Shown: piece after piece, positions 4,201 through 54,364 of the stretch | How the letters are laid out: the number at the start of each line of letters is the position of its first letter | Numbering within the stretch: the stretch's first letter is position 1 | IMG/VR virus record: IMGVR_UViG_3300020202_000061 | Coordinates: 124,001-188,000 of that record | DNA: 64,000 nucleotides | Direction: 5' to 3' (one strand) | Notes under the pieces: generated by a model | Told to the model about the DNA's origin: nothing | Database searches by the model: none | Seen by the model: only the letters and a program-made list of their open reading frames with translations | Program-made: the position numbers and the translations under genes

Positions 4201-4211
4201 AGTGCAACCCC

Positions 4212-4240
4212 TTGACATTCTCAAGGGTTTGCCTTAAATA
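4212..4240 (+). promoter_or_regulatory. Hybrid promoter TTGACA-N17-TAAATA for tmRNA
   Basis: Exact spacing; same design at 54045-54073 (tRNA cluster) and 5628-5656. Confidence 0.7.
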
Positions 4241-4246
4241 GGTCTT

Positions 4247-4515
4247 GTGACGTTGAAGCGTTGAAGAACGCTACTCTGGACCTGGGGGCGGTACCCAGCG
4301 GCTCCACCAAAATGCCCTCGGGCGCTATGGGGCCGAAACAGGATCGACAGGTAGTCAGTAGGCACGTGGAGTCATCCGGCGGAAGCTCGGTTAACGCAAC
4401 ACAAACAGTAATTGCCAACGATAACTTCGTTGCGGACGAGGGTTTCCGTATGGCCGCCTAAGGCGGTCCTCGGTAATCCAAATCCATCGCCCGGTGGGCG
4501 GGAAACAGAAACACC
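4247..4515 (+). ncRNA. ssrA: Circularly permuted two-piece tmRNA (alphaproteobacterial type); tag ANDNFVADEGFRMAA
   Basis: Acceptor piece first: T-arm CTGGG-GGCGGTA-CCCAG then CGGCTCC-A-CCA (ends 4309); 19-nt spacer; coding piece starts GGGGCCGAAACAGGATCGAC (4329). GGGGCCG/CGGCTCC gives the G3:U70 Ala determinant; tag 4414-4461; 3' GGAAACAGAA motif. Outer ends approximate. Confidence 0.93.
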
Positions 4516-4545
4516 AGAGAGCCGCCTTCGGGCGGCTCTCTTTTT
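4516..4545 (+). terminator. Intrinsic terminator of tmRNA
   Basis: AGAGAGCCGCC-TTCG-GGCGGCTCTCT followed by TTTT. Confidence 0.9.
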
Positions 4546-4561
4546 GTGTGGGATTACGGAA

Positions 4562-5139: not shown

Positions 5140-5145
5140 ACCACC

Positions 5146-5301
5146 CAGTATGATGGTATTGGTTTTCTAATACCATCATACTGAATCTGATTGTTAGGGA
5201 ATCTCAAGTAGTATGTGAGTTTTTCTCACACAAGCATATCAGATATGCTTGTATTACATTGATATTTCTATTGTATTAGTCAATACAAGTATCTAAATAC
5301 T
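5146..5301. repeat. AT-rich cluster of inverted repeats
   Basis: CAGTATGATGGTATT/AATACCATCATACTG (15 bp perfect), TGTGAG/CTCACA, ACAAGCATATC/GATATGCTTGT, TTGTATT/AATACAA, AGTAT/ATACT. Confidence 0.8.
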
Positions 5302-5319
5302 CTCTGTGGAAAGCAAACC

Positions 5320-5490
5320 ATGATGAACTGGCTCAAACGAGTTGGTCGTGAGTTGCTGATGACATCGAGGGAGCGCCAGGAGCAGGCATTCCTCGGGCAG
5401 GCGGTAGACCTAGCGGATTTGGAGTGGCGCATGAAAGAGATTCAATCGGGCCGCTTCATTTGCAAACCTTATGAGCGTTGCTACAGATGA
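5320..5490 (+). CDS. DUF3563-like small protein
   Basis: 56 aa, ERQEQAFLGQAVDLADLEWRMKEI resembles the DUF3563 pattern (E..EAYL..S.D..DLERRMR); below ORF-track cutoff. Confidence 0.6.
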   Translation: MMNWLKRVGRELLMTSRERQEQAFLGQAVDLADLEWRMKEIQSGRFICKPYERCYR

Positions 5491-5657
5491 TCTGGGGCAA
5501 AGCTGTGGGTCTGCTCGGGTTCATGCCGTCGCGACCGAGAGACGAGGTGGATCGCTTTTTCGACCTCGAATATCGTCGTGAATCAGCAGACTATCGTGAC
5601 GTTCTGAATCGCGAATTCCGAAAGGGGTTGAAAAACTCCTCGGAAACCGCTAAGTAA
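5487..5657 (+). CDS. Small hypothetical protein (56 aa)
   Basis: ATGA overlap with previous ORF. Confidence 0.45.
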   Translation: MIWGKAVGLLGFMPSRPRDEVDRFFDLEYRRESADYRDVLNREFRKGLKNSSETAK

Positions 5658-5662
5658 GAACC

Positions 5663-5768
5663 AAGCGACAACGACAATTTGTTCCTCCTAGCCGCGTAAG
5701 CGGCTGGATGGGTGATCCACCTGGAAACAGAACGGGTATGATGGGCGAGGAGAAATCCTCGCCTTTTT
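5663..5768 (+). ncRNA. Stand-alone tmRNA mRNA-like-domain RNA (tag-like frame DNDNLFLLAA*)
   Basis: GACAACGACAAT..GCCGCGTAA tag-like frame, stop-codon hairpin CTAGCCGC-GTAA-GCGGCTGG, ACCTGGAAACAGAA motif like the 3' end of alpha tmRNA coding pieces; promoter TTGAAA-N17-TAAGTA; terminator GGCGAGGA-GAAA-TCCTCGCC-TTTTT. Confidence 0.6.
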
Positions 5769-9336: not shown

Positions 9337-9426
9337 GGGCGTGTGGTGTAATGGCAGCACAGCGGTCTTATAAGCCGTTCGTTCCGGACTGGAGCATAGA
9401 GACGGGTTCGATTCCCTCCACGCCTA
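9337..9426 (+). tRNA. tRNA-Ile(UAU) with long variable arm
   Basis: Acceptor GGGCGTG/CACGCCT, A73; anticodon loop CTTATAA; V-arm GTTCCG-GAC-TGGAGC; T-loop TTCGATT with bulged T-stem; CCA not encoded (CCG). Confidence 0.8.
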
Positions 9427-9430
9427 CCGA

Positions 9431-40234: not shown

Positions 40235-40301
40235 GGTATTCTATTTATTTCCTTGACGTTTTTCACAATATCTGGTATAAACGGCCATCAGGAGGACACC
40301 G

Positions 40302-45321: not shown

Positions 45322-45373
45322 CGCTTGCCTCAGAACCAAATCCCCACCATATTTGGGGTTGGAAAGAAGAATA

Positions 45374-46960
45374 ATGGGGAATGCAGGTACTTTTGTCGGA
45401 GCCAAACTCACAGAGGATTGCGCAGATCGCCTGATTGAGTGGATGACCCAGCAGGGTATCCCGAATCCGACTCCCAAAGAGGAGCTTCACTGTACGGTCG
45501 TCTACTCGGAAGAGCGTGAGATCAAGATCACACCGCTCGCCTATGAGCCGCCGCTGGAGATCGATCCGCGATTGTTCAAGTTCAAGCACTTCGGCGAGAA
45601 CCGCGAAGTTCTGGTCCTGGCATTCGACCGGCCTGAACTCGCTTACCGACATAAGCTGCTTCGCGAGAAGTATAAGCTGGGCTGGAAGTTTCCCAGCTAC
45701 ATCCCGCACGTCACTCTGAGTTACAACGCTCCGGAGCACATCGAGGTGTTGCCGGATTTTCCGCTGGTGTTCCAGGGAGAAGAGGTTGGTGGGTTCAATC
45801 CACCGGAGGAGTCTGCTGCGGCCGAGCATCTGGAGAAGAACGAACTCAGTGAGTATTACGAGATCGTCAACGATGAGCCCGTGCGCAAGAAGAAGCGCCC
45901 AGAACCGCCGAAGAAGTTGATCGCGCAGAATCTCATAAAGTTGGGCCTGAAAGAGGATCGTCATCATGAGGACCATCCTCGTGTGCAGGAGCCGGGTCCA
46001 CAACAACTCTCGTATACGAGTTCGATGCGACAGAACGCTGTGGGACAGAAGTGTCAGGTCATCGTGCAGATGCCGGTGCAGGACTTCCTCCGTCTGACCA
46101 CGACGAATGACGCGGATATCGAGACGGTCTTCCGCAAGCAGGCTCATCCGCTGGATTCCTACAATCACTGGAACCGCATGGGCGATGAGCGTGAATACGC
46201 GTCCCAGGTCAATCAGGGCAAGACCTCACAGGATAAAGATTATCAGTGGGGACGGATCGTCGGTCCGTTCTTGCGCATCGACATTGAGCCGCCAGCGGGC
46301 ACCTTCGGTAAGGTCTCCGGCCACGAAGGTCGTCATCGAGCAGCAGCCGTGTGGAACGCCGGAGGTAAAGTGATCCCGGTCGCGTTGTGTCTGCGTCCCT
46401 TCAAGGGAATGTTCCCGAAGAGCTATGGACCCGAATACGAGGCACATCGGGAGCACATCCCGATGGCCGTGCACGGCCAGTTTCGTTCGATCAGTGTGAG
46501 CACGAGGAATTGGAAGGTGATCGAACCAGACCTGCTCAAGCCGTATCGTCGCACGAACGAATCAGTGCTGATGGAGGTCGCAGGCTCGTTCTCGTGGTTT
46601 CATCCTAAGACCGAGCAAGAGGTCACTGCGGAATTCGGAAAGAACGAACACTGGGACCTCGTCAAGGCGAATCCGACGAGGTTTGGCATGACTCGTGCGG
46701 AAGTGAATCAGCCTAATGCGCGGATCGATGATGTCTTCAAACATGGCTGGGTTCGAGTCAACTATTACAGAGGTGTCTGGTACTTTCATGGACAAACCGC
46801 TGCATTGGTGCAGGCCGCAGCCAAGCACTACGCGTGGGCACATGAAGGACTACACGAGGTGATTCTGGATATCGTCGAACCCAACTACAAGTCCTACACC
46901 CTGATGGGTCCGGCCATCGAAAAGTTTCTCAAGCACGGAGTGCTGCCGGAGTGGCGCTAA
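45374..46960 (+). CDS. acb1: Acb1/T4 gp57B-like 2H phosphodiesterase fused to a ParB/Srx-like domain and the repeated unknown domain
   Basis: GTFVGAK...IPNPTPKEELHCTVVYS...LVL.FD..EL..RH...YIPHVTLSY aligns by eye with T4 57B; GHEGRHRAAA ParB-like motif. Confidence 0.8.
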   Translation: MGNAGTFVGAKLTEDCADRLIEWMTQQGIPNPTPKEELHCTVVYSEEREIKITPLAYEPPLEIDPRLFKFKHFGENREVLVLAFDRPELAYRHKLLREKYKLGWKFPSYIPHVTLSYNAPEHIEVLPDFPLVFQGEEVGGFNPPEESAAAEHLEKNELSEYYEIVNDEPVRKKKRPEPPKKLIAQNLIKLGLKEDRHHEDHPRVQEPGPQQLSYTSSMRQNAVGQKCQVIVQMPVQDFLRLTTTNDADIETVFRKQAHPLDSYNHWNRMGDEREYASQVNQGKTSQDKDYQWGRIVGPFLRIDIEPPAGTFGKVSGHEGRHRAAAVWNAGGKVIPVALCLRPFKGMFPKSYGPEYEAHREHIPMAVHGQFRSISVSTRNWKVIEPDLLKPYRRTNESVLMEVAGSFSWFHPKTEQEVTAEFGKNEHWDLVKANPTRFGMTRAEVNQPNARIDDVFKHGWVRVNYYRGVWYFHGQTAALVQAAAKHYAWAHEGLHEVILDIVEPNYKSYTLMGPAIEKFLKHGVLPEWR

Positions 46961-51368: not shown

Positions 51369-51461
51369 AGAAATCCCCTGGTTTTACTCTTAAAGATTGG
51401 GCATCTTTGGAGTTTTTCAAGAAGTCTTGACGCGATCTGTGAGATTTGCTATATATTCGCC

Positions 51462-53319: not shown

Positions 53320-54048
53320 ATGTCCGACGAGAATCCCTTCGAGCACCTATCTGACTCGGAATTGATGGACCGTCTTGGTGTGTCCTGGAATTCCGTGCTG
53401 AACCTGCGTGCGCAGATCAAGAAGGCCAAGGAAGCTCTTCCGGCCGCGTCCGAGGAATTGGAACAGCTTGAACGGGAGGCGAGCAAGCGCAAACGCCGCG
53501 ATGAATGGCTGGCGAAGCAGCCCGAGTTCGAACGAGCCCGTCAGGACCCGGAGTGGCAGGCGTGGCGCGTGGCATTCCTAGCGCGGGCTCGGGCGGCCGA
53601 AATCAACACACTGAACCTTCCAACGCCGGGTTTGAATTTCGTCCATGAGGACGTGTCTCTGACAGACCTCAACCTGTTCATGGCTCCGATCCATCCCGAG
53701 GAAGAGTTCGTTCGGTTCGACAATTCCTGGACCATGGCCCAGGTTGTGGTGCACGTCGGTCTATTCCAGAGCCTGACTCAGGCCAGAAAGAACGGTTTCA
53801 ACAAGCCGATTCCCAGTGGTTTCTCCCAGCATGTGATGGGGAAGAAGAAAACCACGGTGTTCATTCTGAACCGCTTACCCAAAGAGCCTAAGCCCACGCG
53901 TAGCATGTCTTGGGTCTACCAGGGTGTCAGCTATACCTACGGAAATGGCTTTTACACCTGCACCTATCCCGATGGTATTTGGTCGGTCTCGTTCAATGGA
54001 GTGCATTTCGTAAATGGAAAAGTTGTGCGTTCGAAAAGAAACTCTTGA
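53320..54048 (+). CDS. Hypothetical protein with possible S4-like RNA-binding motif
   Basis: Coiled-coil N-terminus; MAQVVVHVGLFQSLTQARKNG resembles the S4 motif. Confidence 0.55.
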   Translation: MSDENPFEHLSDSELMDRLGVSWNSVLNLRAQIKKAKEALPAASEELEQLEREASKRKRRDEWLAKQPEFERARQDPEWQAWRVAFLARARAAEINTLNLPTPGLNFVHEDVSLTDLNLFMAPIHPEEEFVRFDNSWTMAQVVVHVGLFQSLTQARKNGFNKPIPSGFSQHVMGKKKTTVFILNRLPKEPKPTRSMSWVYQGVSYTYGNGFYTCTYPDGIWSVSFNGVHFVNGKVVRSKRNS

Positions 54049-54094
54049 CACACCCTGGGGTTTCGACTAAATACGTCCTGATCGCGAGATCAAC

Positions 54095-54287: not shown

Positions 54288-54364
54288 CCAGCGGTAGCTC
54301 AGAGACAGTAGAGCGCCGGAGTTAAATCTGGAGGTCGGGGGTTCAATTCCTTCCCGCTGGGCCA
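54288..54364 (+). tRNA. Atypical tRNA with 6-nt anticodon loop (GTTAAA); possibly Asn-derived
   Basis: CCAGCGG/CCGCTGG, G73, CCA; stem CCGGA/TCTGG closes only 6 nt. Confidence 0.65.

What the first reader, a model, noticed from the sequence alone, without database searches (positions are those of the whole stretch)
5628..5768. Stand-alone mini tmRNA-tag RNA lacking the tRNA-like domain
Seen: 1.2 kb after the real tmRNA is a unit with the same promoter design (TTGAAA-N17-TAAGTA), a tag-like frame DNDNLFLLAA*, a hairpin over the stop codon, ACCTGGAAACAGAA (the tmRNA has GGAAACAGAA at about 4501) and its own terminator, but no acceptor stem or T-arm. The tag is also in frame directly behind the TAA of ORF 5487-5657, so read-through would append EPSDNDNLFLLAA, an ssrA-like degron (1-in-3 chance by coincidence). 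Inference: a trans-acting alternative tag template, a decoy for tmRNA-binding or tmRNA-cleaving factors, or a retained relic.
Basis: partly seen in the sequence, partly recalled or inferred. Interest (0 to 1): 0.8.

Follow-up and report, generated by a model that had tools for sequence, protein, structure and literature searches.

The report
Orphan tmRNA tag RNA gene
A clade of giant phages carries, beside a normal two-piece tmRNA, a separately promoted ~100-base RNA holding only the tag-coding half of a tmRNA; selection maintains it, and no such tRNA-less form turned up in what I searched.

Summary
The unit at 5628-5768 is real and is not a relic.

A covariance model built only from tmRNAs of unrelated phages matches it end to end (33 bits, E about 3e-7). 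That is a better match than the phage's own tmRNA 3' domain gets.

Seven sequence variants exist in related jumbo-phage contigs, always about 1.1-1.2 kb downstream of the intact permuted tmRNA where that region is present (five of the seven). Four features are kept:
- a TTGA(C/A)-N17-TAxxxA promoter;
- a 10-codon tag (x-N-D-N-x-x-x-x-A-A-stop);
- a hairpin over the stop codon;
- a hairpin with CUG-GNRA-CAG in six of seven, plus a terminator in the six complete ones.

In five close variants, six of eight variable tag sites are synonymous third positions. The hairpins show compensatory changes. The unit is 82-90% identical where neighbouring four-fold sites are 42-59%.

In two distant relatives the promoter is intergenic and the tag cannot be reached from the upstream ORF, so read-through is rejected as the general mechanism. 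No bacterial tmRNA carries this tag.

How a frame without a tRNA-like domain is decoded is unresolved. I favour a tag template supplied in trans (about 0.4) over a decoy.

The parts
5628..5633 (+). -35 element TTGAAA (TTGACT, TTGACG or TTGACA in relatives)
   Evidence: It is conserved with a constant 17-nt spacer whose sequence varies across seven variants. It belongs to a promoter class that is over-represented in the window.
5651..5656 (+). -10 element TAAGTA; it overlaps the TAA stop (5655-5657) of ORF 5487-5657
   Evidence: Relatives have TATAAA (L141) and TAATTA (L143) at the same distance, in intergenic DNA.
5663..5666 (+). Predicted 4-nt leader AAGC; predicted transcription start at A5663, position -4 from the first tag codon (inferred, not measured)
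   Evidence: The first tag codon lies 10-11 nt after the -10 hexamer in all variants. A purine sits 7-8 nt after the -10 in each.
5667..5699 (+). 10-codon tag frame DNDNLFLLAA plus TAA
   Evidence: The relatives encode GNDNSFLLAA, GNDNLLLQAA and ANDNVVSLAA, always 10 codons. N-D-N and A-A-stop are kept through synonymous changes.
5688..5707 (+). Hairpin over the stop codon (equivalent to tmRNA helix 5)
   Evidence: fold. In one search, three of its seven pairs change on both sides, and 95.6% of cells are paired.
5715..5737 (+). 3' hairpin: outer stem AUCC/GGGU, internal loop AC/AAC, inner CUG-GAAA-CAG. It contains the 14-mer ACCTGGAAACAGAA (5719-5732), which is invariant in the five close variants
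   Evidence: The same motif closes the 3' domain of alpha-type permuted tmRNAs in many phage contigs. By reading, the outer stem covaries among variants: AUCC/GGGU, AAUC/GAUU, AGCCC/GGGCU, CCCG/UGGG.
5743..5768 (+). Intrinsic terminator (9-bp stem, GAAA loop, T run)
   Evidence: In one search, three pairs change on both sides between the window clade and L141.
4208..4552 (+). Intact permuted (two-piece, alpha-type) tmRNA gene with tag ANDNFVADEGFRMAA; it is the context and the likely evolutionary source
   Evidence: It is conserved in the relatives.
5487..5657 (+). Real 56-aa protein gene whose variable C-terminal tail overlaps the unit's promoter; it is not part of the RNA
5320..5490 (+). DUF3563 protein gene; a DUF3563-like ORF lies upstream of the unit wherever that region is present

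Best explanation
The unit is a small RNA gene of about 100 nt. It descends from the mRNA-like 3' domain of an alpha-type two-piece tmRNA. It probably arose when an insertion or partial duplication split the 3' end of the phage's tmRNA gene.

It is transcribed from its own sigma-70-type promoter and ended by its own terminator. The inferred RNA starts about 4 nt before a G-initial first codon. It then carries a 10-codon ssrA-type tag frame, a hairpin holding the stop codon, and the conserved CUG-GNRA-CAG hairpin of alpha-type tmRNAs. It has no tRNA-like domain, no helix 2 and no pseudoknot 1.

Shown:
- homology to the tmRNA 3' domain;
- conservation across a clade of jumbo phages;
- purifying selection on both the RNA structure and the encoded peptide.

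Inferred:
- the frame is decoded on ribosomes as a second, shorter degron template during trans-translation;
- the alanyl-tRNA-like domain and SmpB are supplied in trans by the phage's or the host's tmRNA, which would make this a third, unlinked piece of a split tmRNA.
For: Homology:
- A model built from 20 tmRNA 3' domains of unrelated phage contigs matches the unit over its full length (positions 1-113). Scores are 29.5-38.6 bits in the close variants, with E from 3e-6 to 9e-9. The family's own intact tmRNAs score only 22-23 bits.
- The more distant units L141 and L143 score 23 and 19 bits.
- The alignment places the unit's first codon on the resume codon.

Conservation:
- Seven variants were found (window, L123, L124, L127, L132, L141, L143). 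In the five where the upstream region is present, the unit lies about 1.1-1.2 kb downstream of an intact permuted tmRNA.

Selection:
- The close variants are 82-90% identical over the unit. Four-fold degenerate sites of the adjacent ORFs are 42-59% identical for the same pairs.
- In the five close variants, 6 of 8 variable tag sites are third positions and all six are synonymous. Each of the two Ala codons uses four different third bases. The stop varies between TAA and TAG.
- In L127 and L132 the second Ala codon lies in the hairpin loop, yet GC is still kept.
- With the distant variants added, N-D-N, A-A-stop, the 10-codon length and a G-initial first codon all hold.
- The minus strand cannot explain the pattern.

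Structure:
- 95.5% of cells are paired and 6 pairs change on both sides. None of 500 shuffles reaches this, and slid controls give 35-52%.

Promoter:
- Hexamers and the 17-nt spacing are kept while the spacer sequence diverges. The promoter is intergenic in L141 and L143.
- The same promoter design drives the tmRNA and sits just upstream of the tRNA array. It occurs 5 times against 0.26 expected.

Context:
- Relatives encode a PDZ plus Peptidase_S41 protease near the tmRNA. In E. coli, enzymes of this family degrade proteins with ssrA-type C-termini (my knowledge).
Against: - No mechanism is known by which an RNA without a tRNA-like domain enters a stalled ribosome. In known tmRNAs the mRNA-like domain is covalently tethered to that domain.
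- I found no conserved base pairing between the unit and the intact tmRNA. There is no second tRNA-like domain in the window.
- The phage already has a complete tmRNA with its own conserved tag, so a second template looks redundant.
- The first codon is Gly or Asp in six of the seven variants, not the usual Ala.
- The outer stem of the 3' hairpin is only 3-5 bp.
- Two more distant relatives that have the tmRNA and the RHH-like gene lack the unit (L139, L137/L138).
- There are no expression data. The transcription start is predicted, not measured.
- Only seven variants exist, and five of them are close relatives.
Confidence: 0.4

Rival explanations
1. Decoy or sponge RNA. [quoted passage not shown] Candidates are RNase R, ribosomal protein S1, a ribosome-dependent endonuclease, or a host defence nuclease. 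This would protect the phage or host tmRNA, or reprogramme RNA decay. The RNA would not itself be a productive template.
For: - The unit keeps the elements downstream of the resume codon that alpha-type tmRNAs conserve most: the stop hairpin and the GNRA hairpin.
- It has its own promoter of the class that also drives the tmRNA and precedes the tRNA array.
- Phages are known to exploit tmRNA and tRNA fragments that bind RNase R (AcrIIIA1, PMC11662646).
- A phage tmRNA reduced to the tRNA-like domain alone inhibits host tmRNA (reported in PMC11915505).
- Ribosome-dependent toxins cleave the mRNA-like domain (PMC8265657).
Against: - A pure RNA mimic should not confine its substitutions to synonymous third codon positions. 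It should not keep Ala-Ala-stop where those bases lie in an unpaired loop, or hold exactly 10 codons.
- No binding partner is identified.
Confidence: 0.25
2. Directly translated micro-peptide gene. The RNA would yield a free 10-13-residue degron-like peptide that competes for an adaptor, ClpX, or the PDZ domain of the phage S41 protease.
For: - There is peptide-level selection.
- A PDZ protease gene lies near the tmRNA in relatives.
Against: - No AUG, GUG or UUG start codon is shared by the variants.
- There is no Shine-Dalgarno sequence.
- The predicted leader is only about 4 nt.
Confidence: 0.08
3. Silent spare cassette. The unit is kept because recombination with the start of the intact tmRNA's tag (shared CAACGAYAAY...CGTT) can swap the tag and 3' domain of the tmRNA.
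For: - The two tag starts share about 17 nt.
- A recombination mosaic has a breakpoint at or inside the unit: L124 versus L127 versus L132.
- Other phages show insertions and duplicates at tmRNA 3' ends: L044 versus L091, and L047.
Against: - A silent cassette needs no promoter, yet the promoter is conserved, even in intergenic DNA.
- Selection on an unexpressed cassette would be weak.
Confidence: 0.08
4. C-terminal degron added to the protein of ORF 5487-5657 by read-through of its TAA, possibly helped by the odd tRNA at 54288-54364.
For: - The tag is in frame with no intervening stop in the five close variants.
- ARAGORN calls the tRNA at 54288-54364 'Stop|Leu', with a 6-nt anticodon loop.
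Against: - In L141 the upstream ORF is unrelated, ends 49 nt before the tag, and is out of frame.
- In L143 in-frame TAA and TAG codons lie between the ORF and the tag.
- UAA followed by G is a strong terminator context (my knowledge).
- There is no sign of TAA recoding in the window.
- Read-through does not explain the conserved RNA elements after the tag's stop codon, or the promoter.
Confidence: 0.03
5. Non-functional relic: either the displaced 3' fragment of a tmRNA gene left by an insertion or integration, or an attP-like copy of a host ssrA 3' end.
For: - This is probably how the unit arose. L044 carries a decayed duplicate of its tmRNA 3' end behind an inserted ORF, and L047 has its GNRA hairpin displaced by about 1 kb.
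- Islands and prophages commonly leave such fragments (PMC4383910).
Against: - The unit is 82-90% identical where neutral sites are 42-59%.
- Substitutions are synonymous and compensatory.
- No bacterial genome among 185,579 species representatives has a tmRNA with this tag.
- There is no block of identity with the intact gene.
- No integrase is among the called neighbours.
Confidence: 0.03

Closest known systems
Coding piece of alpha-type two-piece (permuted) tmRNA (Rfam RF01849 / RF04321)
   Same: - The tag frame has a G-initial first codon, N-D-N near the start and A-A-stop at the end.
- The stop codon sits in a hairpin (helix 5).
- The 3' hairpin is conserved, with CUG-GNRA-CAG and flanking AC/AA.
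- The promoter is of the same design as the tmRNA promoter.
- An A lies at -4 and a purine at -3 before the first codon.
   Different: - It lacks the 5' acceptor strand, the SmpB-binding region, helix 2 and pseudoknot 1, and no acceptor piece accompanies it.
- The RNA would begin about 4 nt before the frame.
- It scores far below the Rfam gathering thresholds (21 versus 84 bits).
tmRNAs without a tag frame (jakobid mitochondria, some plastids, mycobacteriophage DS6A; 'no CDS' forms in PMC11915505)
   Same: This is a natural tmRNA derivative that keeps only one of the two functional halves. A phage example exists, and it interferes with host trans-translation.
   Different: Those forms keep the tRNA-like half and lose the mRNA-like half. 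Here it is the reverse, and I found no report of that form.
Displaced tmRNA-gene 3' fragments at the ends of islands and prophages integrated in ssrA (Islander, PMC4383910; PMC12595487)
   Same: A second copy of the 3' part of a tmRNA gene lies a short distance downstream of the intact gene. This is the likely mode of origin.
   Different: - The setting is a jumbo-phage genome, and no integrase is among the called neighbours.
- There is no identity block with the intact gene.
- The copy has its own promoter.
- It is kept under selection rather than decaying, in contrast to L044.
AcrIIIA1-bound tRNA/tmRNA fragments (PMC11662646)
   Same: A phage uses pieces of tmRNA as functional RNAs that bind RNase R.
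   Different: Those fragments are cut from host RNAs by a phage protein. They are not encoded as a separate gene, and they carry no selected reading frame.

Membership tests
tmRNA (permuted / two-piece, alpha type) | tRNA-like domain: acceptor stem, T arm and CCA end | tested here: not met
   ARAGORN and Rfam find one tmRNA in the window, at 4208-4552. [quoted passage not shown] The beta_tmRNA alignment skips the 126-nt core.
tmRNA (permuted / two-piece, alpha type) | Tag reading frame with a G-initial resume codon that ends in a nonpolar A-A C-terminus | tested here: met
   All seven variants have 10 codons of the form x-N-D-N-x-x-x-x-A-A-stop, with first codon GAC, GGC or GCG.
tmRNA (permuted / two-piece, alpha type) | Stop codon held in helix 5 | tested here: met
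   Helix 2: 95.6% of cells paired, and 3 pairs change on both sides.
tmRNA (permuted / two-piece, alpha type) | Conserved 3' hairpin with ACCUGG(C/A)AACAGAA | tested here: met
   13 of 14 bases match the RF01849 consensus. The full-length match to model R1 scores 33.2 bits, E 2.7e-7. The motif marks tmRNA 3' ends in 60 of 120 viral-contig hits.
tmRNA (permuted / two-piece, alpha type) | Helix 2 and pseudoknot 1 linking the tag to the tRNA-like domain | tested here: not met
   The promoter's -10 hexamer lies 10-11 nt upstream of the first codon. Homology to tmRNA stops there.
tmRNA (permuted / two-piece, alpha type) | Score above the curated Rfam threshold | tested here: not met
   21.2 bits against a gathering score of 84 for RF01850. 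There is no match at gathering level.
Displaced tmRNA-gene fragment / att site of an integrative element | Block of sequence identity with the 3' end of the intact gene | tested here: not met
   Only a 10-mer is shared, which is at chance level.
Displaced tmRNA-gene fragment / att site of an integrative element | Neutral decay of the displaced copy | tested here: not met
   The unit is 82-90% identical against 42-59% at four-fold sites. Substitutions are synonymous and compensatory.
Displaced tmRNA-gene fragment / att site of an integrative element | Integrase next to the site, and a matching host ssrA | tested here: inconclusive
   No integrase domain appears among the called neighbours. No bacterial tmRNA has this tag in the species representatives. 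However, the rest of the 347-kb contig could not be read, and the host is unknown.
Programmed stop-codon read-through extension | Extension in frame with the upstream ORF and free of stops in all members | tested here: not met
   This holds in the five close variants. L141 is out of frame, and L143 has in-frame stops.
Independent small RNA gene | Own promoter and own intrinsic terminator, conserved in position | tested here: met
   Expression itself cannot be tested with these tools.

The most novel reading that the evidence does not exclude
The RNA is a third, physically unlinked piece of a split tmRNA. Stalled ribosomes that have accepted an alanyl tRNA-like domain with SmpB would load this free RNA, which has almost no leader, by its 5' end. 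The A at -4 would be the first nucleotide. The ribosomes would then translate its 10 codons. This would let the phage choose between two degrons, one perhaps aimed at its own PDZ/S41 protease.
Probability: 0.3. Interest if true: 0.95.

Novelty: new variant of a known kind. Interest (0 to 1): 0.8.

Why it matters
Every known tmRNA, whether one-piece, two-piece, intron-containing or tag-less, keeps the tRNA-like domain. Where a template exists, it is tethered to that domain. Here the template half alone is a separate gene, and selection maintains both its RNA folds and its encoded degron.

If the frame is decoded, trans-translation can use a template that is not attached to the tRNA-like domain. 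That would change how template loading and frame setting by SmpB are understood. It would also show that phages can retarget which proteins are destroyed, and by which protease.

Either reading can be tested directly, because the RNA is short and its parts are well defined.

Tried and rejected
**Recent duplication of the phage's own tmRNA.** Rejected. Local alignment finds only the 10-mer, which is no better than shuffled sequence.

**Copy of a host ssrA 3' end, or attP.**
- Two scans of 185,579 bacterial and archaeal species genomes were run.
- The DNA-level pattern gave nothing. The peptide-level pattern (NDNxFLLAA-stop) gave three chance hits that are not tmRNAs.

**Relatives in public collections.**
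- IMG/VR and JGI metagenome contigs returned only the source contig.
- GenBank phages gave no relative.
- Relatives came only from the large protein collection, through neighbouring genes.

**Other phages with similar units.**
- Model R1 was run over 119 viral loci. It found ordinary tmRNAs, a few coding-region chance hits (L041, L087, L049), and two cases of tmRNA 3' ends split by insertions (L044, L047). It found no second family with a selected tag.
- A pattern for 10-codon tags followed by the hairpin found only ordinary tmRNAs besides the source contig.

**Minus-strand coding as the cause of the third-position pattern.** Rejected. That frame is closed by stops and has no start codon.

**Base pairing between the unit and the intact tmRNA.** Duplex energies equal those of shuffled sequences. 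No complementary 7-mer recurs at homologous positions.

**TAA recoding.** There is no excess of ORFs merged across TAA.

**Protein-family searches of neighbours.** These gave only DUF3563, a weak ribbon-helix-helix match and NUDIX.

**Papers not held.** The two original papers on two-piece tmRNA structure are not in the library. The role of the GNRA hairpin therefore rests on my own alignments.

Full report
**Setting**

The window is bases 124,001-188,000 of a 347,504-bp viral contig, IMGVR_UViG_3300020202_000061, also recorded as Ga0196964_10000008. It looks like a jumbo phage:
- G+C is about 55%.
- It has a tRNA array, NUDIX genes and an Acb1-domain protein.
- It has no close relative among GenBank phages.

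At 4208-4552 lies an intact permuted, alpha-type tmRNA gene. It scores 108.5 bits against RF01849 and 113.6 bits against RF04321. Its tag is ANDNFVADEGFRMAA.

**The observation**

- TTGAAA (5628-5633), a 17-nt spacer, and TAAGTA (5651-5656);
- the TAA of ORF 5487-5657 at 5655-5657;
- the frame DNDNLFLLAA-stop at 5667-5699, in frame behind that TAA;
- a hairpin at 5688-5707 with the stop codon in its loop;
- ACCTGGAAACAGAA at 5719-5732;
- a terminator at 5743-5764 followed by a T run.

The predicted RNA folds markedly better than shuffled sequence: -43 kcal/mol, z = -4.3. No tRNA-like domain is present.

**Is it tmRNA-like beyond chance?**

Direct similarity to the phage's own tmRNA is not significant. 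However, three independent lines point to tmRNA:
- Rfam's beta_tmRNA model aligns the promoter region, tag, stop hairpin, following hairpin and terminator, while skipping its 126-nt tRNA-like core (E 1.2e-4).
- The alpha_tmRNA consensus ends in ACCuGGCAACAGAA, which the unit matches at 13 of 14 bases.
- A scan of viral contigs for that motif returned 120 loci, and 60 of them are 3' ends of permuted tmRNAs.

From 20 such loci, none related to this phage, I built covariance model R1, covering 12 nt before the tag to 22 nt past the motif. It matches the unit over its whole length at 33.2 bits, E 2.7e-7. It places the unit's first codon on the resume codon. The family's own intact tmRNA 3' domain scores only 23 bits.

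The alignment also shows what the motif is: an outer stem that covaries freely, then AC, then CUG-GNRA-CAG, then AA.

**Relatives**

Neighbouring proteins led to related contigs in the large protein collection. Seven distinct versions of the unit exist:

| Variant | Also seen as |
|---|---|
| Window | L125 |
| L123 | L133 |
| L124 (409-kb contig) | |
| L127 | L128, L129, L131 |
| L132 | |
| L141 (more distant) | L142 |
| L143 (more distant) | |

Wherever the upstream region is present, an intact permuted tmRNA lies about 1.1-1.2 kb upstream.

**Selection**

For most pairs of the five close variants, four-fold degenerate sites of the adjacent ORFs are only 42-59% identical. The unit is 82-90% identical for the same pairs.

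Within the 11 codons of those five variants, eight sites vary:
- Six are third positions and all six are synonymous. Each of the two Ala codons uses four different third bases, and the stop is TAA or TAG.
- Two are second positions, both in the window's lineage only.
- None is a first position.

In L127 and L132 the second Ala codon lies in the hairpin loop, where pairing cannot explain why GC is kept. A minus-strand frame cannot explain the pattern either, because it is closed by stops and has no start.

Adding L141 (GNDNLLLQAA) and L143 (ANDNVVSLAA) keeps four features constant: the 10-codon length, N-D-N, A-A-stop, and a G-initial first codon.

On the seven-sequence alignment, 95.5% of cells in four helices are paired and six pairs change on both sides. 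Three of those pairs are in the stop hairpin and three in the terminator. No shuffle out of 500 reaches this, and slid controls pair at 35-52%.

By reading, the outer stem of the 3' hairpin also covaries: AUCC/GGGU, AAUC/GAUU, AGCCC/GGGCU and CCCG/UGGG.

The unit is therefore not a relic. Both its folds and its frame are maintained.

**Promoter and read-through**

In the five close variants the promoter overlaps the variable C-terminal tail of ORF 5487-5657. The hexamers and the 17-nt spacing are kept while the spacer and the encoded residues change. For example, L132 has TTGACT, which changes Lys to Thr.

In the two distant relatives the promoter is intergenic:
- L141 has TTGACG-N17-TATAAA after an unrelated 118-aa ORF. 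That ORF's TGA lies 49 nt before the tag, which puts the tag out of frame.
- L143 has TTGACA-N17-TAATTA, with in-frame TAA and TAG codons between the upstream ORF and the tag.

Read-through is therefore rejected as the general mechanism. The in-frame position in the window is a coincidence.

The pattern TTGAM-N18-TAWDWA occurs five times in the window against 0.26 expected, always on the + strand. The hits include the tmRNA promoter (4212) and a site just upstream of the tRNA array (54045).

In all variants the first codon lies 10-11 nt after the -10 hexamer, and a purine lies 7-8 nt after it. The predicted RNA therefore starts at an A four bases before the frame. This is an inference. In tmRNAs the bases just upstream of the resume codon help SmpB set the frame (my knowledge). 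The phage tmRNAs aligned here mostly have U-A-R at -5 to -3, and the units have C-A-R.

**Origin**

Two other phage lineages show insertions into the 3' end of a permuted tmRNA gene:
- L044 differs from its relative L091 by an inserted small ORF. Downstream of the insert lies a decayed duplicate of the tmRNA 3' end.
- L047 (328-kb contig) has its canonical GNRA hairpin displaced about 1 kb, behind an inserted gene pair.

The unit probably began the same way. The intact tmRNA of this family has a divergent 3' domain, whereas the unit keeps the canonical one.

Recombination has since shuffled it. L124 and L127 share nearly identical upstream ORFs but carry different units. L127 and L132 show the reverse pattern.

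**How it works**

Shown: it is a conserved, tmRNA-derived gene running from its own promoter to its own terminator, and its frame evolves like a translated tag.

Not shown: transcription, and the route by which the frame is decoded.
- I found no conserved pairing with the intact tmRNA.
- There is no second tRNA-like domain in the window.
- No bacterial tmRNA carries this tag.
- No viral contig joins a tRNA-like domain to it.

I favour use as a second degron template with the tRNA-like domain and SmpB supplied in trans (0.4). The reason is that only decoding explains the codon pattern. Against this, the mechanistic gap is real.

A decoy for factors that bind the mRNA-like domain is the main rival (0.25). 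Phage use of tmRNA fragments to bind RNase R is a precedent (PMC11662646).

The context is suggestive. Relatives encode a PDZ/Peptidase_S41 protease close to the tmRNA, and also RNA-repair-type enzymes.

**Comparison and novelty**

Known tmRNA forms are standard, permuted, intron-containing and tag-less (PMC11915505). The tag-less forms keep the tRNA-like half. I found no report of the reverse form.

The unit fails the membership test for tmRNA: it has no tRNA-like domain, no helix 2, no pseudoknot 1, and a sub-threshold score. It meets every feature of the 3' domain. I class it as a new variant of a known kind.

Noticed in passing
window 54288-54364 (+): This tRNA has a 6-nt anticodon loop, GTTAAA. 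ARAGORN labels it 'tRNA-?(Stop|Leu)'. It could be an ochre suppressor, a Leu(UAA) tRNA or a defective copy. It sits 1 nt after tRNA-Arg(TCT). There is no sign of TAA recoding in the window.
   Followed up: partly
window 9337-9428 (+); also L123:4573-4663, L124:14059-14150, L141:6120-6194: A tRNA-Ile with anticodon TAT is 92 nt long here and appears to carry a long extra arm. It is conserved in the relatives, but is only 75 nt in L141.
   Followed up: no
window 5140-5319: The intergenic region upstream of the DUF3563 gene has a perfect 15-bp hairpin (5146-5183) and a perfect 11-bp palindrome (5230-5252), plus an overlapping 91% inverted repeat. Much of it is almost unchanged in L123, L124 and L125. 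It may hold a terminator plus operator sites for the adjacent ribbon-helix-helix-like protein.
   Followed up: partly
window 4480-4552 and relatives (alignment A5): The intact tmRNA of this family has lost the canonical CUG-GNRA-CAG hairpin. It keeps only GGAAACAGAA, preceded by a small hairpin that covaries (CGCCC/GGGCG versus CGCTC/GAGCG). The tRNA-like domain comes in two covarying types among the relatives, and the tag DNA is almost invariant.
   Followed up: partly
L047:2899-4260 (IMGVR_UViG_3300040801_001224, 328 kb): This is another jumbo phage. Its permuted tmRNA has the tag ENDEIFALAA. About 1 kb of inserted DNA follows (a minus-strand gene, a consensus promoter and a small ORF). After that comes a canonical GNRA hairpin, preceded by a degenerate tag-like stretch that the small ORF reads through.
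   Followed up: partly
L044:430-910 versus L091:1289-1460: An inserted small ORF splits the tmRNA 3' end in L044. The copy next to the conserved downstream flank is decayed, while the copy attached to the tmRNA is intact. This suggests the insert brought a replacement 3' end.
   Followed up: partly
L124:1345-4461; L141:439-1671; L137/L138:1-2046: Relatives carry several genes just upstream of the tmRNA region: a PDZ plus Peptidase_S41 (tail-specific-protease type) gene, an AAA_33 plus Metallophos protein, and a T4 Rnl1-like RNA ligase. L137 also has an IMPDH gene with faint intein hits.
   Followed up: no
window 54045-54073, 40253-40281, 51427-51455 (+): These are further members of the promoter class TTGAC-N17-TAxxxA. 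The first lies about 140 nt upstream of the tRNA array.
   Followed up: no
window 45353-46960 (+): A 535-aa protein has an N-terminal Acb1 (anti-CBASS) domain, E 2.6e-22.
   Followed up: no
L137/L138:4476-4911: A more distant relative has a permuted tmRNA for which ARAGORN proposes an implausible 31-residue tag, and model R1 matches only weakly (16.9 bits). Its mRNA-like domain may be atypical, and no separate tag unit was found there.
   Followed up: no
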